A stretch of DNA of 64,000 nt. It comes from Lytechinus pictus. Lineage: Eukaryota. Positions 4,701 through 55,913 of this stretch are shown here, piece by piece. The stretch covers positions 33,604,001 through 33,668,000 of the forward strand of contig NC_087246.1 of the NCBI RefSeq assembly GCF_037042905.1, read 5' to 3'. The notes beneath the pieces were generated by a model that made no database searches, was not told the origin of the DNA, and saw nothing but the letters and a program-made list of their open reading frames with translations. Made by a program: the position numbers and the translations under genes. Positions within the stretch are counted from its first letter, which is position 1. The number at the start of each line of letters is the position of its first letter.

Positions 4701-4962
4701 AATCGATGAAAGGAACGAAGGAAGGGGATGGAATGAAGGTAAGAAACATTGAGACTGCCTGGTTTTTAACCGCAACGGTGTGTTCATGGAACACCCACCT
4801 CCCTACTGCAGATAGCTCAGTGTAGCTTGTGACCATAACCTGAACCTTTTGCTTCTGGGACCATTACTGAGGAAGTAGGTATTGGCCAAGTTTCACGCTA
4901 CTAAAATATTTTCCATACTGAATTGTGCACAGGTGAATGCTTCAAAGTGGTATTAGGTTGAA

Positions 4963-4976
4963 CATGGGCCTCCATG
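4963..4976. mobile_element. 14-bp degenerate remnant, probably the same family
   Basis: CATGGGCCTCCATG flanked by GGTTGAA (4956-4962) and GGTTGAT (4977-4983). Confidence 0.55.
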
Positions 4977-7900
4977 GGTTGATCAAAATCATCTATATTT
5001 AGCGCAATAGTAACGTAATCGGGAATTCACTTTCCTTTCCCCTTTCAGCAACCTGTTTAGTCAAGTGGATTGTTAAATCTCATTCTCTCATCATGATAAT
5101 AAAATATTCCTGACAATGAAATAAAAGTCATGTATTTTCCAAGTCAAGCAAAAGTTGATTGCAGGCTACACAAGTAAAATATTCTTCTCGTCTTCACTAG
5201 ATTAAGAATATTTGTAAATGACGGATGAATGTGTTCCCTGATAATGATCCATGTATTATTTCCGAATGGAGTATAATCGCAAGTATTACATTTTGATAAA
5301 CAAAAATATATCATAATTACAGTTTCAAAGATTATATTTTTAATTTTATTCTTATACTGAATTTTACTGTTTACATATAATGTATATAAAAAAGAATTGT
5401 AAATATCAAGACTAATTTTACTATATTATTGGCTTTTAAAACTTTTATTTGATAATAATAGTAACACATGTGACTTATAAAGCGTCAAATTCACTTTGTG
5501 TTCAAGCTGCATCGGCTGGGCTAGCAATTTCAGTGACAAAAACATCTATATTATTGTAATTTTGCCTCGTATTCGATTGGCATGTTGGCCGGGAATACTG
5601 AATATCGAATCGTATTATCTGCTTGCAATTCTCCGCTTCCAAATATTATTTTAGGTAACCTCGAGGGGTGCAGAATCTAATCAGTTGGAACATAACTAAA
5701 TTTCCGACTTGGTCCAAAAGAAGTATGTCTTTTACGTTAATAACAACCTTGCACACGGGGAGTTGACATATTTGGGCCTGCCATATATATGTCAAAACGA
5801 CCTTTTAGAAGTCTTTTAAGATCTCGTGTTGCTACGTATCTCCCATCAAAATGACAAAAGATCCAACCAGTTCTAGACCAAGACAGCAGGCTAACGGAGA
5901 CAATTTTCCATTTTGTACAGTCCATGACCAACATGGAGATGTTTTTCTAGTGGAACTAGATTCATATTCTTCATATTTTTACAGAAATATTAAAGAAGAA
6001 TAACGAATGACGATAATGACGAGTGATGCATTCATTAATTATATTCAGTCTTTTTCCTATGATCTTTCGGGTTGATAAGTTGATGTATCTGATATTACAC
6101 AAAATTCGAGTCAACTTGATTTAGCAAGCCTCAAGTTAAGTGTGAGGATGAATGTGGGAGTAGGGTTTGGTGTTCATCACTAATTAATAAACACAATTTG
6201 ACATGATATACATGTATCACATGCTTCTTTCAATAAAAAAATATTATTTGTGACAAAGTAGCCATTTACAATGAAAACCTTCGGATCCACATAACACACT
6301 CATACATATTATACTGTAAATTAAAAAAAATATTGATAGGGATCTGGAAATGGTTCTGAAAATATGTAAGTGTAGTGAAGAATTCACTAGATAATAAATG
6401 AAATTAATCTAGTAATGTTTATGAAAATATCAAAGTGTAATAAACATGAAGTATATTACTTATTAGCATGGCAAACTAGATCCTGTTTTATTTTCGTTAT
6501 ATTTCTTGGCTGTATCGCAGTTAAACAAATTGCATAAATGTGCTTAATCTGGTACTTGGATACCCGCCATTTTGGCACCAAATGCATGCGTAGCAACCAG
6601 AAGTTATCTATTGCATTCAAATTTAGCCATCACAACATTGAATGAAATAATTACTAACGCTAAGTTGTAGTAGTTTTACGTAAACTTTCTTTCCGTTCCC
6701 CCTTTACCTGTTTCCTAATTCGGAACTGAAAATGGGTCCTTGCCAGCGATGGATATGAAACAACCGATCGTATCTTAGCAGTTTGAAAGAGCCCCACAAC
6801 ATGACTGTTAAATATCTGGTCGATTGTGTTCATATGACACAAGATAATCTTTGGGACCACACGGGAATATTAATAGAATAATAAAAAAACAGACTGAAAA
6901 AGTTATATTCGTGAGCTTCGCTGAAGAAAGGGTTTTAAATAACTCCATGGACTATCAAAAAAGTAGTCTTTTATCCCCTAATTTTCTGCGGTGGGTGAAT
7001 CAGTAATGACGAATATTTTAGATCCTGTTATGCAGTAAGGGACCTGGAGAAAAGGTCTTTTATAACAGCAGGTGCAGAGAAACCTGTAACACTGTAACGA
7101 AGGGTGTGGTACACGGTGTGGGGCACGTGTTTGTGCGTGAGTGTTTTGTGCCTGTTTGTTTGTTATGAGTGTGTGTTTTGTGCCTGTCTGTGTGTTGTGA
7201 TTGTGTTTCATGTACCCGAATGTATGCACAATAATTGGGTTTATTGTAATCATTTCTACACTTTTTTTTTCAGTGATCCGTGACCTGCCTACAGATCAGA
7301 GACCCACATTAAAATAGTAAGGATTATCATGATCATAGAAGACTGAAACAAAACCGATGTTAATTCATGCTTTATGATAAATTAATTACAATTGTAATTG
7401 ACGAACGAGGCATAATTCTACAGCTGAAATCCTCGACTTTGATAATATAACATATATAATATATTCAATGTAAACGATTAATTGAAATGTAATTTATACT
7501 ACACGTAATTGACAAAATGGATATGCATGAATAATCATAGCAAAAACCACTGATCAGAAAACTGTAAATGGTTTCACTGTTGTCTGCGGGAGTCTTTATG
7601 TTCATCCTGTAATGATTATTCCCAACCTACGAGAGATTGTTTTGAAACGTAATCCAGCCTGTCTGAAAATGAAAAGCTCTTCCGTTTTCCTTCCAATTTT
7701 GGCTTTCTGAAAGGATTTAGGTTGAGAAGGGTGACTCTAAGAGATATGGTATTTTGTCAAATGAAAATGTTTTGATGAGTCACACTGTCATGCTGAATGG
7801 CGAACATGATAATTCCTTACACAGACCATGGACCTACTAGAAATAACCATCATTCAAGATTGTAAAGTAAGTAAATAAGTAAATTACACAACTTAATGTA

Positions 7901-14730: not shown

Positions 14731-16731
14731 ATATTTCTAAAGTAGTTTTTTTATTCATTCAACTTATTAAAGCTAACCCATAATTAGATATGTCGTCCTG
14801 ATATGCATCAAATTGGCAACACATATTACGTACTTAAAGCAGGTTAGACAGTTAAAGCTTACATGTATGTAGAAATCCTCCGTATTATCCCATGACTAAT
14901 GTACACAAGAGACCCAAGAGATTAGGTTTCTGAAAGTCTACGGGTCAAACAAATATTGGCCAAAAGGTTGAATAGGTTCATTATCACATTAGTCTGGTTT
15001 AAAATCAAATGGTGACCTTGAAAAAGCAGTACGACGTCCCTGGTTAACCCAGTAGAGAATTTTAACAGACAGAGAAGTCCAACTTTTCATCGTATCGCAA
15101 CTGTCCCAATTATTCGAATGACGTTTTCTTACTCATTCGATTTGGAAGTCTGGGAAGTATCGACATGAAACCCCTTTTTTACTCATTTTAAGTTAATTGG
15201 TCATCCAGTCTGGGTCAGTGAAGAATGATGATGTGATTTCCGCTTTACCCGAATAAAGCAACAAATGACGCGCTTGACAACAAGGAGGTAATATACACAT
15301 TATATAGGGGGCCTGTTGATTTTTCTGTTGCAGACCAACGATAATCACAATCATGATCGAACAATTCCTTCCAACACTATTGTATTTTGACATGTATTTT
15401 GTATTTTCAACATATTCACGATTACAGGTGTCTTCTAATTCCATCTCCTAGTGTTCCTCTTGATTTTTATTTCAAAGACAAGTGGCGGCACCACATGGGG
15501 CGGGGCCTCGTATGATGTTTGAAAGTGCCAAAGACCATCCCCAAATAATAGTGTAAACTACAATGTATTTTTATTCTGTAAGCTATATTTTCTTCACTCT
15601 ATTCAAAAGATAAACATTACACTTAACACCTTTAGCAATGCCACTCGGCGTCTACCTTTTACAGCTGCATTTTCGTACCTTTCTGGTGTGAAAGATACAA
15701 CCTTGCACTTAGAAGGTTTTTTTCCATAGTAGAAAGGTGCAAAGGTGCTCGTCCTGTGACATCATGTTGTTCTTTCTAAATCTAAAGGTGCAAAGTTATA
15801 CGTTTTCCCTTACAGTTTTCGTGTTCAGAACTCAGAAGAACTCAATCAATAAATGTAATACCATCTGTTGTCATACAACAATGTGACCTGTCTACGGTCA
15901 GCAAAGCTTTACACTGAAGTTATAGATAGATTCATGACAAGGGCTCTAACGATATACACGAATGCCTAGGCTGAGCATGTTAACGGGCTAAACAGATGAT
16001 AACACATAAGCACATAGCTATTTCATGTTACGACAGGTGGGTTTTCCCCGAGGCTCTACTAACATGTCTAGGTAACTGTTTAGTATATGACGCATTCACT
16101 AAACCACAAGGGGCCATTCTGTGTATGACCTGATTCATGTCTACGGGTCATCTTACTTTGATATTAACACATCATGAAGACTTTGGTTGCATCGTGAAGA
16201 AAGATCCTTTGAAGATGAACTGATGGGGAGGTTTACCGCACATGCAATCGAACAGTACTTTCGTAGTGAACTTCGAAATCCTAAAGGCAATTGCAAATGA
16301 AATTAGAATATCCCATGGCGAATCATTTGTGACTCTATTTTCTAAAGTTATACAAGTGTAGGTTAAAAGATATCGAGGGGAATAGATTTGATACTATCTT
16401 GTTCTCTTCTTATTCTGGAAGATTCAATGACTTGGAGGATTCCCTGCCAATGCATGTCCTATATAGAGTAGCCTTAAAGATAAAATATAAAAAACCCGTG
16501 TCTTTGCAAAGAATAAAACCATGGAACAATATGTGACAAATTCTTTAACGGTAAAATGTAAATAGTTCGTAAATACCATTATATTGTTCTTAGAGGGGAA
16601 CATATCTAACAAGACACCTACGCAGATCTAACAAAATTCTCTAGTCGGGAAGAACTAGGTCCCTTTGAAGGATTTTAGTAGCTTTTAGCTGCTATTGTTT
16701 TCTTATTATAACAGGTTTTATGAAACGGCCC

Positions 16732-17645
16732 CCATATAAATTATTTTTTGAAAATAAAATCCTTAAAGTTAATGATATATATTTGTTCCAACTCGGCCAA
16801 TTTATGTACAAACTAAATAAAAATGATCTCCCCGCAATTTTTTCAATTATGTTCTGCAAAAACTCCTCTGTACACGATTATCCTACAAGACAACGAAACT
16901 CCTATCACCTACCTCCAACCCGAACTTTACTTGCAAAAAATTCTTTTGTCTTTTCTGGTCCCGTATATTGGAATTCCTTGCCCAACGCCTTTAAGGAATC
17001 CCCAAACATCACAGTTTTTAAACATAACCTTAAAAAGATGCTTATTAGCCAATACTTTACACAAACAAGTCAATCTACCATATAACCAAAACTATATACA
17101 ACAAAAACTTTTTTTTTAAACCTCCCAGGATACAACTTGCCTGCCGACCTTTTCCCGCACCTGCCATGCTCCTCTTTGCACCTCCAATTGTACCTGCACC
17201 CCCCCTCTCTCCCTACATTTGCTTCTCAGTTCCTCCCTCATTATCACAATTATTGTAACCATACTGTTATTATTTTTTTATTATTATTATTACTATTATC
17301 ACTTATTCTAATTTGTGTTACTCTTTCGTTGTTACCTTTGATATTTTGTATATAGCCTCCTTTTCCCTCCTTTTAAACTGTCTCCCGTCTCTCCTTTATA
17401 TTATAATTTTGTAATATACGTACTGAAACTAAGTTACGGGGGCTTGCCTCTCATACAAGCTTTGCTTTTGTTGGCAAGCCCCTCCGTTCTGTTTTATATA
17501 GTCATTATAGTCAAAGTTACTTTAGTTCGCATTAGTTCTCATTGTTTATACCTTACTCCGATTGATGTTGTACTTCAAATTTGACTATGTATTGTTTGAT
17601 TTTGTTGTGCTTTGTGAACGGAAAATGAATAAATCTAAAAAAAAA
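16732..17645 (+). mobile_element. 5'-truncated L2/CR1-group LINE (ORF2 C-terminus, 3' UTR, A tail)
   Basis: ORF ...HDYPTRQ...SFVFSGPVYWNSLP...FKHNLKK is typical of CR1/L2-group ORF2 ends; 3' hairpin 17439-17482; aataaa and A-run near 17628-17645. Confidence 0.85.
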
Positions 17646-19651
17646 TATATAAGTTGCAATAATGTTGGCACAGATTCATTGTGAAAGCTGGGCCCACTGG
17701 AATCATGTTGTGATATAATGCGTCATTCAGGAGGCCCTACCTGCGTTAGACGAGGCCAATTCTCGTTGAGTCGATCTTAATCATCAAGATCGTGATCACT
17801 CCAATATGGAACTTTCTACCTCCTCCATCCTTTCAAAGATCTGACGTCAATAGTCCCATTGTGTCAATGTAATAAGCCTGTTCACGGTTGTAAACTGCAC
17901 ACGAGCAGAAAAAGGTCATTGGAGACAACCATGAAGGTGGCTTTCAAATTCACTGACATAGGCATTTGTGATTTGATGATTATTCATGTATTCCTTTCAA
18001 AATATTTATCACATCCAAGCTGAAGAGTAATAAATAGAGCCTTCATAATCACTGGTATTTGACAGTAGCCTAAACAATAGTCAAATGTGCCAAAGGCGAA
18101 CAAAACAGATTTTCAAATTTTATCCCTGATGTACTATTCTAGTCACCTGGTCTATACAATGCCTTTTGTTCTTAGAATTTGAATACTCTACCGGTAAAGC
18201 TTACGCAACATCTACATTTGAAATGATAGTGCTTATCCTAATGAAAAATCACAAAGGTCATTGGAGAAAAGTTGATCATGAGCTAACCGTGAACTGGCTT
18301 ATTGAATATGAATGCACCGAGATTAAATCATTCGACGAGGTGGTTCGAAGAGTAAAAGTAATTGTTATATGTTTTAAATGCTGGTGCGCAACATCTTTTA
18401 CTGAGATGGAGAGATAAAGACGTGAGAGATCAAAGATAATGTCAGGAATTCAGAGATGACGCACAGTGGAACTGGTGAATGGTTTGAATGGTTTGGCGTG
18501 CACCTTATTGGTTATCATTTTTCTTCATTGTACATGATATTTTTTTTTATTAATGGGTTAGTTCTCGCTGAATCGTCGTTTTGAAAAACACGTTTTTCAC
18601 TACTACTATATTTGCTAGATTTATCGCTGTGTTCCTTCATGATAATACTTTTTAGTTAGGTTTTCTTTTTCGAATTTTGTTTTGATTCTACCGTTTAATA
18701 TGGTGTACTGTTCAAAATCTCTGTAATTATATGTGTGGCATTATTTTGTAAAAATGACTTTATTGAATTCGATTACGTGCATGCTTTTACGGAAGCATGG
18801 AATGATATAATTGATTGTTTACATTTTTCAAATTAAATATCAAATGATTAGTGACAGCTTCTCTTTGTTCATTGTGATGAACAATATTACATTAATGGTA
18901 AATTATTTTCATTTTGACGCACTTTGTCTACAGTAACACCTGTGTATGTATATCCCATGTCATTTAAATTTGGTCAAGTCTTGTAATTTAGTTCAAGTCC
19001 AAGAGACAGCAAAAGTACAACTGTTGGGAAAAACATGACACTTAACATAAAGTACTCTAAATGAACGCTTTAAAATTGACGCTTACAATCTTATCACTTT
19101 CTGCCAGTTATTTTTGGAGATGTGTTCAACAGCCGCTGTTGCGAATGTCTAGGTGTTCACGTGATGTTAGCCGATTTGAGACAAGTTTGAAATAATTTCG
19201 TGTGATAATGTCACGAACTGTCCACGTGGGCTGACTCACAGAAGACTGTCTACAGAGAGTACCTGGGGAACTGTACATCCCATTTAGGTCTCCAAAATCA
19301 CCTTGCCAAAGTACCCGAGTTCATCTCCTTTTAAGGAACACGACATAAGTGGGGCAAAATGCAATTCCGAAATAACTACTACCCCAAATCCATATGAGGT
19401 GCACCTACATGTTTTGTTTCGATAGGGCTATCAAAATTCAGAGTCATGAAAAGGAGATTTTTTTAATATAAATTTTCAGAAAATACTCATCATGGGCATG
19501 TTATCAGGTCACGTTTTGGGACGTATTGAAACTACACCTCACTGTGTGACAACAGTTATGCCTTAGCTACACCAAATACCCGACCACCCTGACAGCACTG
19601 CATTAACTTTATATAACACAATCATTTGGTTCGGTCTACGACTGGATTCAA

Positions 19652-19957
19652 TAGGGAGTTTCCGCTTCCACGACTCGCGACAGATTCAGGAACGTAGAAA
19701 ACCTATTGTCAAATGCCCTTCATGACAAAGCACCATCAAGAAGTCTTGGTCTAAAATTGGTGAATCAAAACAGCAGTTTCGTCCTGGACTCCAGACAAAC
19801 GGCTTAATTGAATTGCTTTCGTCAACTCCGAAACTTAATAAGGACGAAACTGCCTTTCGGTTCGCCCTCCCAGCTGTTCATTGTCATTTGGCGGGCATGT
19901 ACAATACATACACCGTATTCTTCAATCAGTCCCCGTTGCAGTTGCGAAAACTCGTTA
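19652..19957 (+). mobile_element. ~300-bp MITE family, copy 2
   Basis: Same termini and core (ttgtcaaatgcccttc...gtcaactccgaaact). Confidence 0.7.
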
Positions 19958-20529
19958 TTTTCATTTGGTTATACCGAAGGCCCTATCACACTGACATACA
20001 CCACATCATCCTAAATAATGCAATCGTTTCGTTTAATCTGGAATAAATTTCATTGGTATGACTGTATATCGTCGTTGGAAGGGAAATAATCTAAAACGTC
20101 ATGAAGAACCCGAGGAAAAGTCTGTTGTGAAAATCACAGTCGGAATTAAAAATGCCTCTGGAAACGTGAGTCTCCTTTATTTCAAGGACAAATTATATCG
20201 TTCTTGAGAATATAAAGTGATGTCATGAAAATAATGAAGACATCTCCACATCACACCAAGAACATTGTATATTTTGCCAGTCTCTCTGGGAGATATGAGT
20301 CATTCAAAGAGAAAGGTTTCGAAAAATACGTTGAATCATACATGTACAGGAGAAAGAACTCAAATTCCAAAAGGAACACGACACAACGTAGTTCGGTAAT
20401 ACGTAGATTTTGCTAAGTTGTGATAGATTCGACAACCGCGTTTCTCAAGCATAAGATCTGACTTGAAAGACCTTGTCCTCGACCGAAAAGTTTCAAGTAT
20501 GACAAAATAAAAAAGGCAAGGGCAGTATG

Positions 20530-21715
20530 AATTAGGGTGCGATCCGTGATGGTCATCATATCTAACGAAAGCTGGTCAAGAGGGGAAATACTATTAATTT
20601 ATATAAATACTGGATTACTTCTTCCTGTTCTCCATGCACTGCCATATGTAAGAACAATCGATCTGTCTTGCAAAGAACAAGGGGCTTCATCTGTACAGAC
20701 GATATTGGTATTGCTGCTCGAGACAACAACAAATAGAACGAAGCCACCTTAACATTCGCCACAGGCAGCCTGACACTATACTACATGCTAACCATGTCAA
20801 GACCAAAGTTAGGATATTCCACCTACGTAATCATGAGGTTGGGAACAAGATGTCACAATCATGTGATGGTTCCCCAATTGTCCACTTCGTCCATCATATG
20901 TAACCAGGCATTATGCAACCTAGACCGGTCACTTTTATAAGCAGCACATTGAGAAGGTACAGGGAGAAGTGAGGACCAGGAACAGGCGCGTATCCAGCAT
21001 CAGATCCTACAAAGCATTTCATGGGCCCAATTCTCTTGGGACAATACATTGCTTTGTCATAGTTGATGCTGGATACGCAAATGCGGAACAATCTCCTGCA
21101 GGAGAATTCCAGTTGAGGCCAAACAATCTACACTTTGCTCAACGGTTCCGTCGGCCTTTGCACTTTTGTGCCAAAGTATGCATATCCACAAATATCGACA
21201 GTCTGTACATTCTGCTCCACCGGTCAGCAGTCAGTAGTATAAGGCATTTCTAACAAAGCCAGGATAGTCGCCAAACAACCAAAACAACCAATCGTGGAGC
21301 GGCTAAAATCTCAGACGTCTTACTCTCTGTCCAGCCCTGAGTCGAATCCCCATGTAAACCTCATGAGGAATATTTTTAAAGTGACGACCATCATCTTGAA
21401 AAGCTCTCGCATCTACCACAGATATAATATCACAAGAACAACAAGTCTGGAAGATATAGAAGTCCCTCAACTGATTTCGCACAGGGATGGCCCAGGTTAT
21501 TAAAGTGCAAACGGGGATACACCAGCGACTACAGCACAAGCAATGAATGTGGAGTGTCTGAGACCACGCAGCATCTTCTTAATTGTCCAAACATTGTAGT
21601 TCAGTGAAGCCAGGAAGAACTGATAGCTACAAATGAGAAAGCTCTGTGATGTGTCTGGTGAAAACCTAGTATCTGACTGATGTGTTTAGATGTCGGACAC
21701 GAACGAAAAAGATCA
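20530..21715 (+). mobile_element. Decayed non-LTR retrotransposon 3' portion (I/Ingi/Nimb-like)
   Basis: Broken reading frames give KTKVRIFHLRNHE, LDRSL, YKQHIEKVQGEVRTRN, FRTGMA and a zinc-knuckle remnant ECGVSETTQHLLNCP; ends ggacacgaacgaaaaa; boundaries approximate. Confidence 0.65.
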
Positions 21716-22157
21716 GGCAAATGTAGAGTGTGCTGAAGCCTTTAAATTGTCATAAGCTTCCACATGATTTCGTTCAACCCTTAACACACTTAAGGTGGCA
21801 TACGCTGTACCTCAGAAAGTACCCCTGGTGCCAACATCCAATATATACATATATAAAGGTAGAAATAATAACCTTTTGACTTTACTGCATGTTAAGAAAA
21901 GCAACAAAATTAAATATGTTTACAAACATTAACATTCCAACTGTTATAACAAAATATCACATCGTTTGGATGCTTCCCAGATGTAGTAAGTCAGGATAAA
22001 GTAAATCTGATTCCCATAAAGAATGGTGGGTTGAGGGGTGAGCTCATCGGAAAATCCGTGAAAGTAATGGTTGAGGGGGTGAGGTCACTGGAAAATCCGT
22101 AAAAGTACCAGAAAATGGGCTCGATGGGCTCTTTCCCCAACAACTCTTGATAAATAC

Positions 22158-23264: not shown

Positions 23265-23295
<31 letters not shown>

Positions 23296-23441: not shown

Positions 23442-23706
23442 ATGTCTACTCAGGTCGTTCTGATGACCGGCTGTTCAGCAGGAATTGGTCTTGTTACAGC
23501 TAAACGTCTCGCTCTTGAACCAAATCAGCGATACGTCGTCATCGCTACCGTCATAGCGATGTCGGAGAAGACCGACTTGGTAGCTGCCGTAGGGGACGCT
23601 CTCAATAAGACAATTTTCATTGAGGAATTGGATGTCACAAAGGATTGTGACATCACAACCGTAGTGGATAAAATTCTCAAATCACATGGGCGTATTGACA
23701 TCCTCT
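23442..23706 (+). CDS. SDR gene 1 (RDH8/17beta-HSD1-like), coding exon 1
   Basis: ATG at 23442; MSTQVVLMTGCSAGIG carries the SDR TGxxxGxG motif, followed by LDVT and GRIDIL; phase-1 donor t|gtaagt at 23707; 265 nt. Confidence 0.93.
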
Positions 23707-23781
23707 GTAAGTGTTTTTGCTCTTTATATGAAACATCGTTAAGACAAGCAAGTTTATTTATGAGGTGTCAATTTGAACCAG

Positions 23782-32169: not shown

Positions 32170-32464
32170 ATGTCTTCTCAAATTGTTCTGATGACCGGCT
32201 GTTCATCGGGTATCGGTCTTGCGACAGCTAAACGTCTCGCTCTGGTACCGAATCAGCGATACATCGTCATCGCTACCGTCATCGCGATATCCGAGAAGAC
32301 TGACTTGGTATCTGCCGTAGGGGACGCTCTCAATAAGACAATTTTTATTGAGGAATTGGACGTCACAAAGGATAATGACATCACGTCCGTAGTGGATAAA
32401 ACTCTTAAAGAGTACGGGAGAATCGATATACTCATGGACCTATAATAGGTCCATGATATACTTA
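32170..32464 (+). CDS. SDR gene 2, coding exon 1 (interrupted)
   Basis: MSSQIVLMTGCSSGIG...GRIDIL; acceptor tttgcag| ending at 32165 implies an upstream non-coding exon; donor a|gtaagt at 32465. Confidence 0.8.
32433..32455. mobile_element. 23-bp palindromic transposon remnant, putative P-superfamily excision footprint
   Basis: CATGGACCTATAATAGGTCCATG flanked by direct repeat ATATACT (32426-32432 and 32456-32462). Confidence 0.85.
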
Positions 32465-40771: not shown

Positions 40772-41170
40772 GGTTTACTTCCAATTCGTCTAATGCCAAT
40801 TCGTCCAATTGCCAACTCATCTACTACCATTTGGTCTATCATCCGTTCCTCTTCTCACCAAATGGTCTACTTTCATCTAGTCTTATGCTATTCCGTCTAA
40901 TAACCAGTTGGTCCAATAGCCATTTATTCCATATACCATTTGGTCTAATTACACTTAAGTGTTAATTGTGCAAAATGAATGAAAAGAAAATGGGTATTAG
41001 ACCAACTGGTTATTAGATGAAATGGTGATTAGACGAAGTGATGATTGGACCAAATGGTTATTGGACCAAATGGTTGTTAGACGAAATGTTGATGGACGGA
41101 ATGGCATTAGACTGAAGGTAGACCATGTGGTGAGTGGACGAGTTGGCAGTGGACGAATTGGCAATTTACC
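40772..41170. mobile_element. Foldback MITE built from ttggtc/gaccaa sub-repeats
   Basis: Left half has ttcgtc/ttggtc repeats and right half their complements; TIRs ggtttacttccaattcgtc / gacgaattggcaatttacc; imperfect flanking repeat caaatc. Confidence 0.75.
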
Positions 41171-45501: not shown

Positions 45502-47471
45502 TTAATAATGTGATGAAAACCAGACCAGGGCCCCGTAACACAAAAATTAGCGATCAATCGCTAAATGGTGATGGTCAATCCAGATCAATGTTACATTTGC
45601 GGATTGTTTAAAACACTGCCCAGAAACCGATCAGAATGGTTCTTTCATGCTTGGATCCAATCGCAAACTATGAAATTAGAAATAAATTATAAATGAATGA
45701 TATTAGCGATTTTAGCAAGAAAATCCCGAGGACTGTCTTCGATTCTATTGTTCTTGAGAAGTTGGTAAATCATCATCATGATATAAATGACGTTTTTCTA
45801 AGTAATCAGCCAATTCTTAAGCTCGTAATTTTTAAATGGGAGAAGGGAAGGTTATTTGGAATAACAGGTTATCAATTAAAAAAAATGGCCATACCCCCCA
45901 CCCCTCCCCGACAAACAAAATAAGAAACAAATGTTATTACAAACCAGAAATTGTCACTAATTTCCTTCTAAATAGTCAGGAATGTATATTTACATTTGTC
46001 GGTGTGGTACACTACCTGTTATACTGGTATCTGGTGTATATGGTATTATTAGAAAAAAGCCGGATATCATTCTCACTATAAATGTATTTACATGTTGATA
46101 TATTTGTTTGTACAACATGAAAAGTATGTTGATTATCACAACATTCATTATTGTAGAGTAATTTCTCAGCAACAGATACCACATCCTTCTCCCCCTCCAA
46201 TCGCCCGTCTGTTTTTTTTTTGCATGGTCCAAGCCCCCCCCCCCCTCCACCCTCCGTTATTCGTTTTCGGGGGGGGGGTGCAGAACCGCACATGGTACCA
46301 TTTCATGAAAAAAAGAATTTCTAACAAATTTTGATATAAATACAACTATTTGTTTTAAAATGTATGGCTGTCAACATCAAAACACGTATACAAGAATGAA
46401 AATCGTTCAATTGATAAAAAGACAAACACTGACAAAAAGAATAACTTTCCAAAAAGGATGTCGGTCTAGGCCCAATAGCACATGAGATTTGTCACTCGTA
46501 AACAGTGTCGAAAGAGAAGTCATACACATTATTATCCTTCGCCTTTTCCCAAAATAGCATTTTGGTGCAATTTTCCCTAACTTCTCCAATAAATTTCCCT
46601 CCTAAGTACTTGGCTTCCCGCCATGTTACTCACTCTTTGCGGTCTCCATTTTTACAATCGAGTTTGTGTTCTGTCTCCCATATTAATTTTTTTATTGCTT
46701 AGAGTTTAAACGTTCCCGACCCTTATACTGTACATAATTTCAAAAATTACCTCAACATCTATAATTCCACTCAGACTCGAGTTATAATATCCTGATTTCC
46801 TGCGATAAAACCAATTTTTTTAAGTATCAAAGCAAGTATTTTGTTATATTTTTTTTAACAAGGGAAGAGTTTCTTTTAACTGGGAGAATTTAAAGAATCG
46901 TATCATGCACTAACAGTAAATGAACCTCACGCACGATCACTCATTGATGTGCATTTTCCACAGAAATAGGTGTAACCAAATTACCTGCTGGTTTAACACA
47001 GAACACATGACAGAATATAAATATTATATTTCTTTGGAAATGTGACCATGTTTTTAGTAATATACAGGGCGTTACAAATTTAGAAAAGTTGTAAAAATAT
47101 CTCTTTTAAATGTTTTTTTAATGAGGTAGACGCACTTAAAGCAAGGTTTCCACTTTGGCGAGTTGGAGTTGCGAGTCATACGCGAGCTGCGCGAGCTCTA
47201 ACTCGCCTTAGCTCGCACAAGCTCGCGTGAAATTTACATTTTTCCGTGGAATTTGCTTGAGAGACAAACGACTCAACATCGAGTTCACTACGCTCGTTGT
47301 ACGAGTGAACCGAGCGCGAAACGAGTCAGGCCGAGCTTAGTATGAGTTGCGGTGACCTTTATACGACTTAAAACGAGCTATGAACGAGTTATAAAGATTT
47401 TGTTACGAGTGATAAGAGTTTCATACGACCAAGGGGCGGGAAATGCAGATTTTTGGCACTCAAAGATGGAT

Positions 47472-48923
47472 GCCGGCGGAAGCGGCGTCAACACCAAATC
47501 TTAACCGAAGGTTAAGTTTTTGAAATGGCATCATAACTTAGAAAGTATATGGACCTAGTTCATGAAACTTGACCATAAGGTTTATCAAGCATTACAAAAA
47601 ATCGTTCACGAGTTTCAGGTCACAAGACCAAGGTCAGAGATCATTTATGGTCAATGAACGTAGACCAAGTTTAGGGAATCAACATCAAAATCTTAACCTA
47701 CGGTTAAGTTTTTGAAATGTCATCATAACTTAGAAAATATATGAACCTAGTTCATGAAACGTGGACATAAGGTTATTAAAGTATATAAACATCCTGCTTG
47801 AGTTTCAAGTCACATGACTAAGGTCAAAGGTCAATTAGGGTCAATGGACTTTGGCCAATTGGGGTATTTGTTAAATTAACATTATAACTTTGAAAGTTTA
47901 TGAATCTGATTCATGAAACTTGAACATAAGAGTAATCAGGTATCACTAAACATCCTTTGCGGATATCAGGTCACATGTCCAAGGTCAAAGGTCAATGAAC
48001 TTAAGTGATGTTCGGGTGATCTGTTGAATTACCATCATAACTTTAAAAGTTTATAGATCTGATTCATGAATCTTGGATATAAGAGTAATCAAGTATTCCT
48101 GAACATCCTGTGCGAGTTTCAGGTCACATGACGAAGGTCAAAGGTCATTTAAGGTCAATAAACTTTGGCCATGTTGGGGGTATTTGTTGAATTACCATCA
48201 TAACTTTGAAAGCTTATGTATATGATTCATCAACTTGGATATTAGAGTAGTCAAGTATCACCGAACATTTCATGCCAGTTTCAGGTCACATGACCAAAGT
48301 CAAAGGTCATTTAAGGTTATTGAACTTTGGTCATTTTGGAGATTAATACTATATTGCTGTCATAACTTTCAAAGTTTATAGATATGATTCATGAATCTTG
48401 GATATAAGAGTAATCAAGTATTCCTGAACATCCTGTGCGAGTTTCAGGTCACATGACGAAGGTCAAAGGTCATTTAAGGTCAATAAACTTTGGCCATGTT
48501 GGGGGTATTTGTTGAATTACCATCATAACTTTGAAAGCTTATATGATTCATCAACTTGGATATTAGAGTAGTCAAGTATCACCGAACATTTCATGCCAGT
48601 TTCAGGTCACATGACCAAAATCAAAGGTCATTTAAGGTTATTGAACTTTGGTCATTTTGGAGATTAATACTATATTGCTGTCATAACTTTCAAAGTTTAG
48701 ATACAGTTTATAAAATGTGGATATAGGGGTAATCTAGTATCACTGACAAGTCTTAGGTCACATGATAAAGGTCAAATGTCATTTATTGTCAATGAACGCA
48801 GTATTGTATCAATGTATGAATGGTGTTTTTGTGAATAATTATTTTATAATAGTTTTCAGAGTCAGCACTACTTCTATATTGGGTAGCGTGATGCAGGTGA
48901 GACTGCCAGAGGCGCTCCACTTG
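47472..48923 (+). repeat. HINE/Helentron-like element with ~160-bp tandem units, inside copy A
   Basis: Starts with ggc repeats; repeated cataactt...aggtcaaaggtca units; ends gcaggtgagactgccagaggcgctccacttg. Confidence 0.7.
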
Positions 48924-49208
48924 GACCTTAATTGTCTATAGTTTGGTGTCTTGTTCTTTTACCTTGGCTCTGCTCGTCATTGACCTCCTATTCCGTTTCA
49001 ATTGTCTCTTCCTGCACTTCTTCTACCCTTGTTTGAATGTCATCTTCTTTCGCTGTTTCCTATCTGAATGGCCACAACTCTTGGATCTTTTGGATCGAGG
49101 CATATTCTCTCCTTATTTGTTGAAAGTTGTTATAATGCAGTGGAAACAGCCTTTTTAAAAGTACGTGTACATTGCGTGGGTCAGTTAAAATGTGCTCTCA
49201 CTTTAAAA

Positions 49209-50317
49209 TAAACTCCTCAAAAAAAGTTTGGAAATCCGACTTTAATCAAAACTCCCTCCTCAGTTTTAGTAAATATCAATTGTTATTAATATCAATGAAT
49301 ATATCATTTAAGTGTCTTTAAAATGATACCCTACATGATATGATTATGGTTCACATGGAGGTGCAGTGCCTTGAAATGTAGGGCAAGGTCAAAATTCAAA
49401 CTTAAGTTGCAAAGAGACACAATATTGAAAGTCACTGTTCCTTTTTCCGTGGTGATGAGTGATAATTTTAAGCGGTTTCTTTTGAGTTAGATCGGTAATC
49501 CCGCCTCGGTTTTAGTAAATATCAATGTTGAATTAATATCAATGAATAGATCATTTAATTTTCTTTAAAGAGATACTTTCCATGATATGATTTTTGCTCA
49601 CATGGAGGTGCAGTGCCTTGAAATGCGGGGCACGTTCAAAATTCAAAATTTGCAAAATGACACAATATTGAAAGTCACTGTTCTTTTCTTTCATGATGAT
49701 GAGTGAGATTATCAGCAATTGTTTTCATGCACCTTAACATCAACATTCAAATGGAATCAAACACACCTCTGCACAAGCAAACACACAACAAACAAACATA
49801 AACCACAACAAAACATTATGAAATGAAAAAGCAGGGGTTTGATTTGAATGGATTTTCATCTTTATTGACACAGACAAAAAAATCATGTTCTGTATTGACC
49901 CTTCATGATTACTCCTGCTCGTTTTGCAGCTTTTACTTCAGACCTCATCCAACACTTATTAATTTCGCTCTTTTTTGATGGCATGATCATAACAAGCATG
50001 GGATCATTTTAAAGAGAATCAAATGATCTTTTGAAAGATATCAAATATGCATTGTGTAAAATTTGGAGTCGGGATAAATTAATGGCCAAACTTAGATTTC
50101 CAAACTTTTTTGCTCGTTTTGCATCTTTTCAATTCAGACTTTATCCAACACTTTTGAATCCTGCTCTTTTCGTGATGGCATGATCATAACAAGCATGGTA
50201 CCATTGTAAAGAAAATTGAATGACCTTTTAAATGATGTCAAATATGCAATGTGTAAATTTTGGAGTTGGGAGAAATTAATGGCCAAATTCAGATTTCCAA
50301 ACTTTTTGAGGGGTTTA
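49209..50317. mobile_element. TA-flanked (Tc1/mariner-like) non-autonomous element inside copy A
   Basis: TIRs taaactcctcaaaaaaagtttggaaatc / gatttccaaactttttgaggggttta; duplicated 200-250-bp subterminal units. Confidence 0.7.
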
Positions 50318-51151
50318 TATGTGGGGAAAATATAGATCACTGGACATTTATCATTCAGCTGGCATGCCTCTGAGCTATTGCAACGCACTCGGAATAAACT
50401 CATACGAAACTCGCTGTAACTCGGGGTGCTCGATCTAAAGTCGCGCTAATCTCGTGGGCACCTCGTAAAACGATCGCAATGCTCGTATATCGCTCTTGAA
50501 AACTCGGAACGCACTCGCGTATACTCAGATGTGGCGAGTTATTACGAGTTATTGTGAGTTTATTTCGAGCTTCTTACGAGTTATTGCGAGTACTGCGAGT
50601 ATATAACGAGTTTAGGTGAGTTCAGCACGAGTTACAGCGAGTTAGCAAAATTTTTGAACATGTTCAAAAATTTTGAAACAGCTCACGACTTCAAGGAGAG
50701 TTGTCCCGAGCTTGAACGAGCTCCGCCGAGCCATGCCGAGTTGTCGCGAGTTATCCCGAGTTTCATGGTGAGCTTTATGCGAGTTATCGCGAGTACCTCA
50801 TTTTGGCAACTCGCTATAAAGCAAGGTTTCCACTTTGGCGAGTTGGAGTTGCGAGTCATACGCGAGCTGCGCGAGCTCTAACTCGCCTTAGCTCGCACAA
50901 GCTCGCGTGAAATTTACATTTTTTCCTGGAATTTGCTTGAGTGACAAACGACTCAACATCGAGTTCACTACGCTCGCTGTACGAGTGAACCGAGCGCGAA
51001 ACGAGTCAGGCCGAGCTTAGTATGAGTTGCGGTGACCTTTATACGACTTAAAGCGAGCTCTGAACGAGTTATAAAGATTTTGTTACGAGTGATAAGAGTT
51101 TCATACGACCAAGGGGCGGGATATGCACATTTTTGGCACTCAAAGATGGAT

Positions 51152-52270
51152 GCCGGCGGCGGCGGCGTCAACACCAAATCTTAACCGAAGGTTAAGTTTT
51201 TGAAATGGCATCATAACTTAGAAAGTATATGGACCTAGTTCATGAAACTTGACCATAAGGTTTATCAAGCATTACTAAACATCCTTCTCGAGTTTCAGGT
51301 CACAAGACCAAGGTCAGAGGTCATTTATGGTCAATGAACTTAGACCATGTTTAGGGAATCAACATCAAAATCTTAACCTACGGTTAAGTTTTTGAAATGT
51401 CATCATATGAACCTAGTTCATGAAACGTGGACATAAGGTTATTAAAGTATATAAACATCCTGCTTGAGTTTCTAGTCACATGACTAAGGTCAAAGGTCAA
51501 TTAGGGTCAATGGACTTTGGCCAATTGGGGGTATTTGTTAAATTAATTAACATTATAACTTTGAAAGTTTATGAATCTGATTCATGAAACTTGAACATAA
51601 GAGTAATCAGGAATCACTAAATATCCTGTGCGGATATCAGGTCACATGTCCAAGGTCAAAGGTCAATGACCTTTAGTGATGTTCGGGTGATCTGCTGAAT
51701 TACCATCATAACTTGGAAAGTTTATAGATCTGATTCATGAATCTTGGATATAAGAGTAATCAAGTATTCCTGAACATCCTGTGCAAGTTTCAGGTCACAT
51801 GACGAAGGTCAAAGGTCATTTAAGGTCAATGAACTTTGGCCATGTTGGGGGTATTTGTTGAATTGCCATTACTTTGAAAACTTATGGATATGATTCATCA
51901 ACTTGGATATTAGAGTAGTCAAGTATCACCGAACATCTCATACCAGTTTCAGGTCACATGACTAGAGTCAAAGGTCATTTAAGGTTATTGAACTTTGGCC
52001 ATTTTGGAGATTAATACTATATTGCTGACATAACTTTCAAAGTTTAGATACAGTTTATAAAATGTCGATATAGGGGTAATCAAGTATCACTGACAAGTCT
52101 TAGGTCACATGATCAAGGTCAAATGTCATTTATTGTCAATGAACGTAGTATTGTATCATTGTATGAATGGTGTTTTTGTGAATAATTATTTTATAGTAGT
52201 TTTCAAAGTCAGCACTGCTACTATATTGGATAGTGTGATGCAGGTGAGACTGCAGGAGGCGCTCCACTTG
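51152..52270 (+). repeat. Same tandem-unit element inside copy B (about two units shorter)
   Basis: Colinear with 47472-48923 but lacking the ~325-bp internal duplication. Confidence 0.7.
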
Positions 52271-52539
52271 GACCTTGTCTAGTTTGATGTCTTGTTCTTT
52301 TACCTTGGCTCTGCTCGTCATTGACTTCCTCTTCAGTTTCAATTGTCTCTTCCTGCACTTCTTCTACCCTTGTTGAGTGTCATCTTCTTTCGCTGTTTCC
52401 CTACCTGAATGGCCACAACTTGGATCGAGGCATATTTCTCTCCTTATTTGTTGAAAGTTGTAATAATGCAGTGGCAACAGCCTTTTTAAAAGTACGTGTA
52501 CATTGCGTGGGTCAGTTAAAATGTGCTCTCACTTTAAAA

Positions 52540-53649
52540 TAAACTCCTAAAAAAAGTTTGGAAATCCGACTTTAATCAAAACTCCCTCCTCGGTTTAGTA
52601 AATATTAATTGTTATTAATATCAATGAATATATAATTTAATTTTCTTTAAAATGATACCCTACCTGATATGATTATGGTTCACATGGAAGTGCAGTGCCT
52701 TGAAATGTGGGGCAAGGTCAAAATTCAAAATTAAGTTGCAAAGTGACACAATATTGAAAGTCACAGTTCCCTTTTCCGTAGTGATGAGTGAATTTTTTAA
52801 GCGGTTTCTTTTGAGTTTGATCGGTAATCCCGCCTCGGTTTTAGTAAATACCAATTTTGAATTAATATCAATGAATAGATCATTTAATTTTCCTTAAAAT
52901 GATACTTTTCATGATATGATTTTGGCTCACATGGAGGTGCAGTGCCTTGAAATGTGGGGCAAGGTCAAAATTCAAAATTTGCAAAATGACACAATATTGA
53001 AAGTCACTGTTCTTTTCTTCCATGATGATGAGTGAGATTCTCAGCAATTGTTTTCATGCGCCTTAACATCAACATTCAAATGGAATCAAACACACCTCTG
53101 CACAGACAAAAACACAACAAACAAACATAAACCACAACAAAACATTATGAAATGAAAAAGCAGGGGTGTGATTTGAATGGATTTTCATCTTTATTGACGC
53201 AGACAAAAGAATCATGTTCTGTATTGACCCTTCATGATTATTTCTGCTCGTTTTGCAGCTTTTTACTTCAGACCTCATCCAACACTTTTCAATTTTGCTC
53301 TTTTTTTATGTCATGATCATAACAAGCATGGGACCATTTTAAAGAGAATCAAATTATCTTTTGAAAGATATCAAATATGCATTGTGTAAAATTTGGTGTC
53401 GGGAGAAATTAATGGCCAAACTCAGATGTCCAAACTTTTTTGCTCGTTTTGCAGCTTTTCAATTCAGACTTCATCCAACACTTTTGAATCCTGCTCTTTT
53501 TGTGATGGCATGATCATAACAAGCATGGTATCATTGTAAAGAGAATTGAATTACCTTTTAAATGATGTCAAATATGCAATGTGAAAATTTTGGAGTTGGG
53601 AGAAATTAATGGCCAAACTCAGATTTCCAAACTTTTTTTGAGGGGTTTA
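52540..53649. mobile_element. Same Tc1/mariner-like element inside copy B
   Basis: Colinear with 49209-50317. Confidence 0.7.
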
Positions 53650-54534
53650 TATGTGGGGAAAATGTAGAACGCTGGACATTTATTATTCAGCTGGCATGCC
53701 TCTGAGCACTTGCCACGCACTCGGAATAAACTCATACGAAACTCGCTGTAATTCGGGGTGCTCGATCTAAAGTCGCGCTAATCTCGTGGGCACCTCCACT
53801 TGACTCGTAAAACGATCGCAATGCTCGTATCTCGCTCTTGAAAACTCGGAACGCACTCGCGTATACTCAGATGTGGCGAGTTATTACGAGTTATTGTGAG
53901 TTTATCTCGAGCTTCTTACGAGTTATTGCGAGTACTGCGAGTATATAACGAGTTTAGGTGAGTTCAGCACGAGTTACAGCGAGTTAGCAAAATTTTTGAA
54001 CATGTTCAAAAATTTTGAAACTGCTCACGACTTCAAGGAGAGTTGTCCCGAGCTTGAACGAGCTCCGCCGAGCCATGCCGAGTTGTCGCGAGTTATCCCG
54101 AGTTTCATGGTGAGCTTTATGCGAGTTATCGCGAGTGCCTCATTTTGGCAACTCGCTATAACTCGCCATAACTCGCGATGTTAACTCGCCAAAGTGGAAA
54201 CCTTGCTTAACTCGCCATAACTCGCGATGTTAACTCGCCAAAGTGGAAACCTTGCTTGCCTTCTCTATCTGACTACGATAAAAGCACAATTTCCAGGGTC
54301 TCAAAATGACTTGCGCCAAAATACAGGACATGACTGGTCACTGAGTGTAACACGTACGTGCAACAAAGGCATTAGTCAAACATGTCTGAAGTACTGGTAA
54401 TCAAATGATTTGTTCGATTTAATTACGATAGGGGTTGGGCCTTTACTTTCGCGCTTGTTTTTGTTGCAACTTGCAACTGCGAAATGTTCATGTAGGTTAA
54501 CTTATATAACCGACAACTATATAGTGTATTTATA

Positions 54535-55913
54535 GGGTGTCTGGAAAACGAAGACCGAAGACCGGGGACTCATATCACACTCGTGTGAAAGCGTTTGTAG
54601 TTCACGCCCAGTGTGTACAAAGCAGTGCAAAGTGTGTACAAAACACGCGCGCGGGTTAGAATGGACTTTGGACCTTGCCCCGACACATGTTCTCCCATTG
54701 ACAATGCACGGGTCCCCGGTCTTCGATCTTCGTTTTCCAAACCCGTTGTTGGGTGTCTGGAAAACGAAGACCGAAGACCGGGGATCGCATTCGTTTAGCT
54801 AAGATACCACTTATAAATGTCATTATGAAGGCCTCTATTATTCAGCTCAAATTCAAGAATATTCTGATCTAGAATACATTAATGTCACTAATTGGCTAAT
54901 AATGAAGTCATGTTAATTGCTTGTGTCAATAAATAGTATAGTTAGACCAGTTGAAGCGGGATAGGTCTCCCATTTTACACCACTATTCCACTGAGACAAG
55001 TAACAAACTCCAGTAATCAATCAGACCAGTTTCAAATTTCCAGTTAGAGGTTAACTCTAGACCAGTAATTTCAGACCAGTTTAATTCTTAACTGGTCCAG
55101 TAAAGTGAACTCGACCAGTTAGACCAGTATGCCGTTTTTCCATTTTCCAGAATTACATTCTGTGAACTGGTTTTTCCTTCTTAATTGGCTGACATTAATT
55201 TGCAATTTTACTACCATTGACATAACGCATGTCTCCGGTCTTCGGTCTTCGTTTTCCAAACCTGTTGTTGGGTGTCTGGAAAACGAAGACCGAAGACCGG
55301 GGATCGCGTCAATTCGTCTAGCTAAGATAGGCCTATAATATTCAGCACCAGTTTAAGAATATTCTGATCTTGGATACGTCATCAGCTATGATTGGCTGCG
55401 GATAAGTTATGGTTATTTGTGTGAATTTCGTTATCAGCTAGGGCATGATATTAAGGATAACGTACATATTTCACCCACGGAATTCAGCCATTGCAATTCT
55501 GAAAACTGTCATAAAACTGAAAACTTGCATACAATACACCTCATACTGCGCAATCACGTACAAGCAGACTCAACTCAACTGGCGTTTGCAACCGATTTAC
55601 TACCATTGACATTACGCATGTCCCCGGTCTTCGGTCTTCGTTTTCCAAACCTGTTGTTGGGTGTCTGGAAAACGAAGATCGAAGACCGGGGACCCGTGCA
55701 TTGTCAATGGGAGAACATGTGTCGGGGCAAGGTCCAAAGTCCATTCTAACCCGCGCACGTGTTTTGTACACACTTTGCACTGCTTTGTACCATGGACCTA
55801 TTACGAATAGGTCCATGTTTGTACACACTTCGGGCGTGAACTACAAACGCTTTCACACGAGTGTGATATGAGTCCCCGGTCTTCGGTCTTCGGTCTTCGT
55901 TTTCCAGACACCC
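54535..55913. mobile_element. MULE/foldback-type non-autonomous element
   Basis: ~250-bp near-perfect inverted arms starting GGGTGTCTGGAAAACGAAGACC; perfect 9-bp TSD GTATTTATA (54526-54534 and 55914-55922). Confidence 0.9.
55791..55817. mobile_element. 27-bp palindromic transposon remnant, same family
   Basis: CATGGACCTATT-ACG-AATAGGTCCATG flanked by TTTGTAC (55784-55790 and 55818-55824); empty site present in the opposite foldback arm near 54611-54625. Confidence 0.9.

What the first reader, a model, noticed from the sequence alone, without database searches (positions are those of the whole stretch)
4956..55824. Family of 14-27 bp palindromes with 7-bp TSDs: candidate excision footprints of an unseen P-superfamily transposon
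Seen: three unrelated sites carry CATGG(A)CCT...(GGT)CCATG joined end to end, each between a different 7-bp direct repeat: 4963-4976 (GGTTGAA/GGTTGAT), 32433-32455 (ATATACT) and 55791-55817 (TTTGTAC). The junctions differ in length, and a lone CATGGACCTA sits at 7827. Established: P-superfamily elements have CA...TG termini and 7-8 bp TSDs, and Drosophila P transposase makes a 17-nt staggered cut, so donor-site repair leaves short pieces of both TIRs. Inference: these are scars of a P-like family with TIR CATGGACCTATT. They are too short for repeat annotation, and three in 64 kb would imply a large hidden mutational load. An ultra-minimal mobile MITE is the alternative explanation.
Basis: partly seen in the sequence, partly recalled or inferred. 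Interest (0 to 1): 0.85.

Follow-up and report, generated by a model that had tools for sequence, protein, structure and literature searches.

The report
Transposon excision scars in sea urchin
Three tiny palindromes in this painted-sea-urchin (Lytechinus pictus) window are most likely repair scars left where a cut-and-paste transposon, probably a relative of the fruit-fly P element, inserted and later jumped out; one sits in a gene's coding exon and puts stop codons in its reading frame.

Summary
All three sites and the lone half-site are at the stated coordinates. Sites 2 and 3 are shown to be insertions by empty sites: a paralogue of each lacks exactly palindrome plus 7 bp, and so does the Lytechinus variegatus orthologue of site 2.

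The "unseen" parent family exists. A 2,293-bp non-coding element in the same genome has the same tip, an imperfect ~33-bp TIR and a 7-bp TSD. Its orthologue is present in L. variegatus.

The same 11-nt tip, joined tip to tip, occurs at 24 independent sites in another animal's DNA in JGI metagenomes. There the TSDs are 8 bp and the junctions 20-32 bp. The two commonest junctions, 24 and 20 bp, are the two products predicted if two 17-nt 3' overhangs self-anneal.

A CATG tip, 7/8-bp TSDs, a G...C palindromic target and retention of 10-17 nt of each end all match the P superfamily. No transposase was found, so membership is inferred, not shown.

Variable junctions argue against a mobile mini-MITE. 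The site 2 scar puts TAA TAG into exon 1 of an RDH8-like gene.

Verdict: a new member of a known kind, of moderate interest.

The parts
4956..4962 (.). Site 1, left copy of the 7-bp target-site duplication (GGTTGAA)
   Evidence: 6/7 identical to the right copy
4963..4976 (.). Site 1 scar, 14 bp: about 8-9 nt of one tip (one mismatch) joined to 5-6 nt of the other
   Evidence: weakest of the three
4977..4983 (.). Site 1, right TSD copy (GGTTGAT)
7827..7845 (+). Solo, decayed element end: aligns to the family TIR over 19 nt (16 identities, 1 gap); no partner end found
32426..32432 (.). Site 2, left TSD copy (ATATACT), inside codons of RDH8-like gene B exon 1
32433..32455 (.). Site 2 scar, 23-bp perfect palindrome: 11 + 12 (or 10 + 13) nt of the two TIR tips
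   Evidence: absent from paralogue A and from the L. variegatus orthologue
32456..32462 (.). Site 2, right TSD copy (ATATACT), 2 nt before the GTAAGT splice donor
32170..32464 (+). Exon 1 of RDH8-like gene B (RefSeq model XP_063951679.1), interrupted by the 30-bp insertion, which reads MDL then TAA TAG in frame
23698..23704 (+). Paralogous empty site for site 2, at the end of exon 1 of gene A
55784..55790 (.). Site 3, left TSD copy (TTTGTAC)
55791..55817 (.). Site 3 scar, 27 bp: 13 nt of one tip + CG filler + 12 nt of the other
55818..55824 (.). Site 3, right TSD copy (TTTGTAC)
54615..54621 (-). Paralogous empty site for site 3: a single TTTGTAC in another copy of the host MITE-like repeat

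Best explanation
These are donor-site repair scars.

Proposed sequence of events:
1. A cut-and-paste DNA transposon family of Lytechinus inserted at each place and made a 7-bp target-site duplication. Its TIR starts CATGGACCTATTAAGAGATGG.
2. The element was later excised by a transposase that cuts the two strands far apart, leaving a stretch of each TIR tip as a 3' overhang on the flanking DNA.
3. End joining then trimmed, annealed or filled the two overhangs. What remains is TSD, then 5-13 nt of the left tip, then 0-4 nt of overlap or filler, then 5-13 nt of the right tip, then TSD.

Shown: the insertions, the TSDs, the parent family, the variable junctions and the gene disruption.

Inferred: that excision happened, rather than direct insertion of the short unit; the long stagger; and that the enzyme is a P/THAP9-type transposase.
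For: (1) The sites are insertions.
- Paralogue A lacks exactly 30 bp (23 + 7) at site 2.
- A second copy of the host repeat lacks exactly 34 bp (27 + 7) at site 3.
- The L. variegatus orthologue of gene B exon 1 has the exact empty site, with one ATATACT.

(2) The parent family exists.
- L064:31745-34037 in the same assembly is a 2,293-bp ORF-less element with the same tip, an imperfect ~33-bp TIR and the TSD GTCACAT/GTCGCAT.
- The orthologous copy in L. variegatus has GTCACAT on both sides.

(3) Junctions vary and break down into TIR prefixes: 13+CG+12, 11+12, 8+4+8 and 10+10 with a 2-nt overlap.

(4) The same 11-nt tip occurs in another animal (JGI series Ga0126325-35 and Ga0136654).
- There are 24 independent sites; 23 have 8-bp TSDs, 19 of them perfect. 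Junctions are 20-32 bp.
- Ten sites carry one 24-mer and three carry one 20-mer.
- For a 17-nt overhang, the only flap-free self-annealing register gives that 24-mer. The only internal palindromic microhomology of at least 4 nt other than the terminal CATG, which gives only the 4-bp junction CATG, gives that 20-mer.
- The longer arm is exactly 17 nt at 12 of the 24 sites.

(5) P-like traits.
- The tip starts CATG. Zebrafish Pdre2 starts CATAC; that Drosophila P starts CATGATG is from my own knowledge.
- TSDs of 7 or 8 bp are the P-superfamily range.
- The symmetrised target in the 8-bp species is CA|G(T/C)(C/T)GC(G/A)(A/G)C|TG. Drosophila P targets ATRGTCCGGACWAT.
- A 17-nt staggered cut is described as the distinctive feature of P transposase.
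- Echinoderms carry THAP9-like genes with the Tnp_P_element domain.
Against: - No transposase ORF was found in the window (Pfam on 100 ORFs found only SDR domains), in the 2.3-kb element or in the metagenome contigs. No seed sequence was available to search for one.
- No orthologous or allelic pair was found with a full element at one site and a scar at the other.
- Sea-urchin arms are at most 13 nt, so they do not fix the length of the stagger.
- In the other animal some arms are 18-22 nt, longer than a strict 17-nt cut would leave. That needs short repair synthesis or a longer stagger. The TIR beyond nt 17 in that animal is inferred only from a nested series of scars (A, AA, AAC, AACGC).
- Ten identical 24-mers could also be read as a fixed-length mini-element.
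- Only about 190 kb of L. pictus was examined.
Confidence: 0.77

Rival explanations
1. Abortive gap repair, with no long stagger. After excision by any cut-and-paste transposase, the broken ends copy a few nucleotides of each element end from the sister chromatid or homologue (SDSA) and are then joined. This would give extreme internal-deletion derivatives. The family need not belong to the P superfamily.
For: Arms of 18-22 nt in the other animal exceed 17 nt. Galileo and P literature describes gap repair producing deleted copies. No transposase was identified.
Against: Every sea-urchin junction found with a search allowing up to 70 bp is 27 bp or shorter. In the other animal the longer arm is exactly 17 nt at 12 of 24 sites, and the two modal products are the two self-annealing registers of a 17-nt overhang. 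Processive copying would give a broad length range.
Confidence: 0.13
2. Ultra-minimal mobile MITE. The 20-27-bp palindrome is itself mobilised in trans and inserts with a new TSD, so the sites never held a long element.
For: Ten independent sites in the other animal carry the identical 24-mer with clean 8-bp TSDs.
Against: Six sea-urchin junctions have six different lengths or sequences: 14, 18, 20, 23 and 27 bp. The other animal has 13 junction types, whose differences follow nested TIR prefixes rather than random mutation. The modal forms are predicted by repair. From established knowledge: P-type transposases bind internal sites outside the tips, and two ends 0-5 bp apart cannot be synapsed on one duplex.
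Confidence: 0.07
3. Chance palindromes, functional hairpins or assembly artefacts.
For: Bacterial contigs in the metagenome scan carry the same 10-mers in hairpins without TSDs.
Against: Shuffles. Exact empty sites in paralogues and in a sister species. The same family appears in independent assemblies of two urchin species and in Illumina metagenomes. There is one TSD-less match in 596 Gb of prokaryotic DNA.
Confidence: 0.02

Closest known systems
Drosophila P-element donor-site footprints (17-nt staggered cleavage followed by end joining)
   Same: The TSD is retained. Pieces of both TIR tips are joined head to head, with 0-4-nt microhomology or short filler. The tip starts CATG. In the 8-bp-TSD animal the modal arm is 17 nt, and the target is a G...C palindrome resembling ATRGTCCGGACWAT.
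   Different: The TIR sequence differs beyond CATG. The TSD is 7 bp in Lytechinus. These are natural, fixed or segregating genomic scars rather than laboratory excision products. No transposase has been linked. Some arms exceed 17 nt.
Galileo / 1360 (P superfamily, Drosophila)
   Same: The TSD is 7 bp, occasionally 8 bp, within one family, and the target motif is palindromic.
   Different: Galileo has very long foldback-like TIRs and the target GTANTAC. The few Lytechinus TSDs show no clear match to that consensus.
Zebrafish Pdre2 / THAP9 elements
   Same: A deuterostome P-like family with a short TIR starting CAT (CATACCTGTCAAC), many internally deleted non-autonomous copies, and excision products that carry deletions.
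   Different: The TSD is 8 bp and the TIR is unrelated after CAT. Genomic tip-to-tip scars have not been described for it in the papers read.
MITEs
   Same: TIR plus TSD, non-coding and multi-copy. The 0.6-2.3-kb element in L064/L066 is a non-autonomous member of this kind.
   Different: The 14-27-bp units are far below any known mobilisable element and vary in length from site to site.
Tc1/mariner, hAT and piggyBac excision footprints
   Same: These are also donor-site repair products of cut-and-paste elements.
   Different: From established knowledge, those leave 0-3 nt of the element end, or palindromic copies of flanking DNA, and have TA, 8-bp or TTAA TSDs. Here 5-17 nt of each element tip is kept.

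Membership tests
P superfamily (P / THAP9-like) DNA transposons | Transposase with an N-terminal THAP domain and an RNase-H-like catalytic domain interrupted by a GTP-binding domain (Pfam Tnp_P_element) | not testable with these tools
   No such ORF was found in the window, in the 2.3-kb element or in the metagenome contigs. No tool-given seed sequence was available, and the sea-urchin genome cannot be searched by DNA here. The literature says echinoderms have such genes.
P superfamily (P / THAP9-like) DNA transposons | Target-site duplication of 7 or 8 bp | tested here: met
   7 bp at window sites 2 and 3 (perfect) and site 1 (6/7), at L063, at L064/L066 and at the L066 scar. 8 bp at 23 of 24 sites in the other animal.
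P superfamily (P / THAP9-like) DNA transposons | TIR beginning 5'-CAT(G/A) | tested here: met
   The tip is CATGGACC.... Pdre2 is CATACC.... Drosophila P is CATGATG... (own knowledge).
P superfamily (P / THAP9-like) DNA transposons | Donor flanks keep many nucleotides of both TIR tips after excision | tested here: met
   Arms are 5-13 nt in Lytechinus and 10-22 nt in the other animal.
P superfamily (P / THAP9-like) DNA transposons | Cleavage stagger of exactly 17 nt | tested here: inconclusive
   The modal 24-mer and 20-mer match the self-annealing registers of a 17-nt overhang, and the longer arm is exactly 17 nt at 12 of 24 sites. But arms of 18-22 nt exist, shorter overhangs with fill-in would give the same 24-mer, and the sea-urchin arms are uninformative.
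P superfamily (P / THAP9-like) DNA transposons | GC-rich palindromic target motif centred on the TSD | tested here: met
   In the 8-bp species, G is at TSD position 1 and C at position 8 in 28 of 46 half-sites, and the motif is CA|GYYGCRRC|TG, compared with ATRGTCCGGACWAT for P. There are too few Lytechinus sites to judge.
MITE (the short palindrome itself as a mobile unit) | Homogeneous copies of fixed length | tested here: not met
   Lengths are 14, 18, 20, 23 and 27 bp in sea urchins. There are 13 junction types in the other animal, although 10 of 24 sites share one 24-mer.
hAT superfamily | 8-bp TSD, TIR tip YARNG, and excision footprints made from flanking DNA rather than from the element | tested here: not met
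   The TSD is 7 bp in Lytechinus, the tip is CATGG (third base T), and the scars are made of element tips. The definition is from established knowledge.
Dada superfamily | 6-7-bp TSD with insertion into tRNA or snRNA genes | tested here: not met
   No Rfam family was found anywhere in the window. The sites lie in a coding exon, a MITE-like repeat and unique DNA. The family description is in PMC3706591 (listed).

The most novel reading that the evidence does not exclude
The 20-27-bp tip-to-tip palindromes are not passive scars. They would be the smallest transposable units known, still recognised and moved by the family's transposase. That would explain why one 24-mer recurs at ten independent sites with clean TSDs.

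A milder novel reading is more likely (about 0.5). Such scars number in the thousands to tens of thousands per genome, form an unannotated fossil record of excision, and show that the ~17-nt stagger of P transposase is ancestral and conserved across animal phyla.
Probability: 0.07. Interest if true: 0.9.

Novelty: new member of a known kind. Interest (0 to 1): 0.55.

Why it matters
- Excision scars are normally invisible to repeat annotation. Here they can be recognised by sequence, dated against a sister species, and read as a record of how the transposase cut and how the host repaired the break.
- If the P assignment holds, natural scars in two distant animals would be in vivo evidence that the unusual long staggered cut of Drosophila P transposase is a conserved property of the superfamily.
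- The scars also have consequences. One lineage-specific scar places two stop codons in exon 1 of an otherwise intact RDH8-like gene, yet the RefSeq protein model reads as if the scar were absent. Such scars may therefore create null alleles and mislead gene models.

Tried and rejected
- Partner end for the lone tip at 7827, and any long element with CATG...CATG ends plus a 7-bp TSD within 20 kb in the window: none found.
- Pfam on all 100 window ORFs of at least 75 aa and on 131 ORFs of the metagenome contigs: no transposase or THAP domain.
- Rfam on the window: nothing.
- Literature search for the tip sequence: only primers.
- Search for the JGI sample identifiers: nothing, so the second animal stays unidentified beyond being a metazoan with PSMC2, LUC7, SRCR and C2H2-ZNF exons.
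- Viral contigs: no match.
- Attempts to find the L. pictus orthologue of the L. variegatus scar and the L. variegatus orthologue of the L063 scar: the flanks do not align.
- Search for other alleles of gene B exon 1 among short ORFs in public assemblies: only other species or paralogues at 86% identity or less, all without the insert.
- 62830 (a 20-bp near-palindrome between TATCATT repeats) was rejected as a further scar. That generic class is expected 0.6 times per shuffled window.
Full report
**Where the window comes from.** A locus fetched through the annotated protein of gene A is letter-for-letter identical to window 18442-32767. It lies on Lytechinus pictus chromosome record CM073227.1 of assembly GCA_037042905.1, so the window is about 33,604,001-33,668,000 of that record. 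The window is 36% G+C and has two assembly gaps. The only Pfam-recognisable genes are two tandem RDH8-like short-chain dehydrogenase genes, A (23442-27767) and B (32170-34937).

**The gap.** The gap at 36995-37317 sits in a GTA/GCA-type simple repeat. The finding's coordinates are an envelope around three separate sites of 28-41 bp, and the nearest is 4.5 kb from the gap. No conclusion depends on continuity or reading frame across it. I did not fill it or look it up. The sister-species locus I used stops at window-equivalent 36,044.

**Observation.** All four places are exactly as described.
- Site 2 is a perfect 23-bp palindrome between two ATATACT copies.
- Site 3 is a 27-bp palindrome with a 3-nt centre, between two TTTGTAC copies.
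- Site 1 is a 14-bp near-palindrome between GGTTGAA and GGTTGAT.

In 300 dinucleotide shuffles the specific structure with a perfect TSD never arose. With one TSD mismatch allowed it arose 0.017 times per shuffle. A motif-blind scan for any 10-80-bp insert with arms of at least 8 bp between perfect 7-bp repeats expects 0.01 per window. It finds two, both of this family. A scan of 596 Gb of prokaryotic genomes found one match, without a TSD.

**They are insertions.**
- Gene A is a paralogous empty site for site 2. Removing 23 + 7 bp from B restores an ungapped alignment that runs ...GAT ATA CTT A|GTAAGT.
- A second copy of the MITE-like repeat that hosts site 3 has a single TTTGTAC and lacks exactly 27 + 7 bp.
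- The L. variegatus orthologue of gene B exon 1, reached through the orthologue of gene A, is an exact empty site.

Site 2 therefore arose in the L. pictus lineage after the two species split.

**The parent family is real.** Sampling about 125 kb more of L. pictus through paralogous SDR genes gave two further finds.
- One more scar: L063:2351-2370, 20 bp, TSD TTTAGAT/GTTAGAT.
- One long element: L064:31745-34037, 2,293 bp, with no ORF over 94 aa. It has the same tip continuing AAGAGATGG, an imperfect TIR of about 33 bp, and the TSD GTCACAT/GTCGCAT.

The long element's orthologue is present in L. variegatus with GTCACAT on both sides. That copy has a 6-bp deletion at the left tip and lacks a 1.7-kb nested insert. 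It carries a different nested 0.2-kb inverted-repeat element of its own. The insertion is therefore older than the species split, and the basic element is a non-autonomous unit of roughly 0.6 kb.

L. variegatus also has its own 18-bp scar, with TSD TTGTACG/TTGTACC. The lone tip at window 7827 aligns with the TIR over 19 nt and is best read as a decayed solo end. Against the TIR, the window scars decompose as 13 + CG + 12 (site 3), 11 + 12 (site 2) and about 8 + 6 with one mismatch (site 1).

**A second animal.** About 40 come from one sample series and are animal DNA, with C2H2 zinc-finger, SRCR, LUC7 and PSMC2 exons.

After merging the same locus seen in different samples, there are 24 independent sites. 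23 have 8-bp TSDs, 19 of them perfect. Two contigs of another sample (L020, L045) show 7-bp TSDs.

Junctions run from 20 to 32 bp, the upper limit being the cap of my pattern. Ten sites share one 24-mer and three share one 20-mer. I enumerated how two identical 17-nt 3' overhangs of that tip could pair.
- The only register whose 3' ends are paired gives exactly the 24-mer. It has 8 of 10 pairs, 4 at each tip, and needs only gap filling and ligation.
- Apart from the terminal CATG, which gives only the 4-bp junction CATG, the only internal palindromic microhomology of at least 4 nt (TATA) gives exactly the 20-mer.

The longer arm is exactly 17 nt at 12 of the 24 sites. The other junctions show 0-4-nt overlaps or 1-3-nt filler. 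Arms of 18-22 nt also occur, and they form a nested series (A, AA, AAC, AACGC). This suggests that the TIR continues that way and that some repair synthesis, or a longer cut, occurs.

The symmetrised target is CA|G(T/C)(C/T)GC(G/A)(A/G)C|TG.

**Mechanism.** The published hallmark of P transposase is a 17-nt staggered cut that leaves TIR tips on the donor, which is then repaired by NHEJ or homologous repair. P-superfamily TSDs are 8 bp for P and Pdre2, and 7 or sometimes 8 bp for Galileo. P targets the palindrome ATRGTCCGGACWAT, and Pdre2's TIR starts CATACC.

Four features fit that picture and no other superfamily I know of: the CATG tip, the 7/8-bp TSDs, the G...C palindromic target, and tip retention with a mode at 17 nt. 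Echinoderms are reported to carry THAP9-like genes with the P-transposase domain. No such ORF was found in anything I could read, and I had no legitimate seed for a protein search. The claim 'works like P' is therefore well supported, while 'is a P-superfamily member' remains an inference.

**Rivals.**
- A mobile mini-MITE is disfavoured. Six sea-urchin junctions are all different, the other animal's variants follow TIR prefixes, and repair predicts the modal forms.
- Stagger-independent abortive gap repair is harder to exclude.
- Chance or artefact is excluded for sites 2 and 3.

**Consequence for gene B.** The 30-bp insertion lies 2 nt before the exon 1 donor and reads GRIDIL-MDL-stop-stop. 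Exons 2-4 match the RefSeq product XP_063951679.1 perfectly. That product reads GRIDIL|INVAG. No GT, GC or AT donor in the genome letters can produce this, so the model behaves as if the 30 bp were absent. I could not resolve the cause. It may be a scar-free allele in the transcript evidence, or a 30-bp pseudo-intron.

**Density.** The window was chosen because it has three scars. The unbiased sample has 1 scar in about 125 kb of L. pictus, 1 in about 74 kb of L. variegatus, and none in 23 kb of S. purpuratus. This suggests thousands to perhaps ten thousand or so scars per genome, with wide error.

**Verdict.** It is a new member of a known kind: natural P-type excision footprints in a previously undescribed family. 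The interest is moderate. It comes from the cross-phylum tip conservation, the 17-nt signature read from natural scars, and a lineage-specific scar that disrupts a coding exon.

Noticed in passing
window 32170-32464 (gene B exon 1) and protein P0006: RefSeq model XP_063951679.1 reads GRIDIL|INVAG, as if the 30-bp scar plus TSD were absent. The genome letters give MDL, TAA, TAG before the GTAAGT donor, and no canonical donor can yield the model. The other three exons are intact.
   Followed up: partly
window 54535-54800 (-), 55207-55303, 55596-55913: A MITE-like repeat family of about 250-290 bp with terminal inverted repeats TCCCCGGTCTTCGGTCTTCGTTTTCCAGACACCC. Site 3 lies inside the last copy.
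   Followed up: partly
window about 47384-51060 and 51064-54300: A tandem segmental duplication of about 3.5 kb containing 150-325-bp tandem arrays. Matching TRF rows are 47384/51064, 49916/53241 and 50535/53877.
   Followed up: no
window 16720-17085 and 35108-35578: ORFs that look like the C-terminal tails of non-LTR retrotransposon ORF2 proteins. There was no Pfam hit.
   Followed up: no
window 62830-62863: A 20-bp near-palindrome between perfect TATCATT repeats, next to the second assembly gap. This generic class is expected 0.6 times per shuffled window, so it is compatible with chance.
   Followed up: yes
window 40820-40872, within the tandem array 40781-41163: A 39-bp unit with 9-bp inverted ends (CCATTTGGT...ACCAAATGG) between TCTACTA and TCTACTT, embedded in a 15/16/48-bp tandem array. 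It may be a different small element, or part of the array.
   Followed up: no
L064:31822-33535: The L. pictus copy of the parent element carries a 1.7-kb nested insert with long inverted arms that the L. variegatus orthologue lacks. The L. variegatus copy carries its own 0.2-kb inverted-repeat insert (L066:8510-8708).
   Followed up: partly
L051:914-965 (unidentified animal, JGI metagenome): An element end (...CATTTATAGGTCCATG followed by TGGCGGAC) lies 17 bp from a 20-bp scar with the TSD GCAGAGTT. These are two independent events of the family within 50 bp, reminiscent of local hopping.
   Followed up: no
L020 and L045 (JGI sample Ga0126339): Tip-to-tip scars of 21 and 25 bp with 7-bp TSDs in 38-39% G+C contigs. 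The TSD length matches Lytechinus rather than the 8-bp animal. The host was not identified.
   Followed up: no
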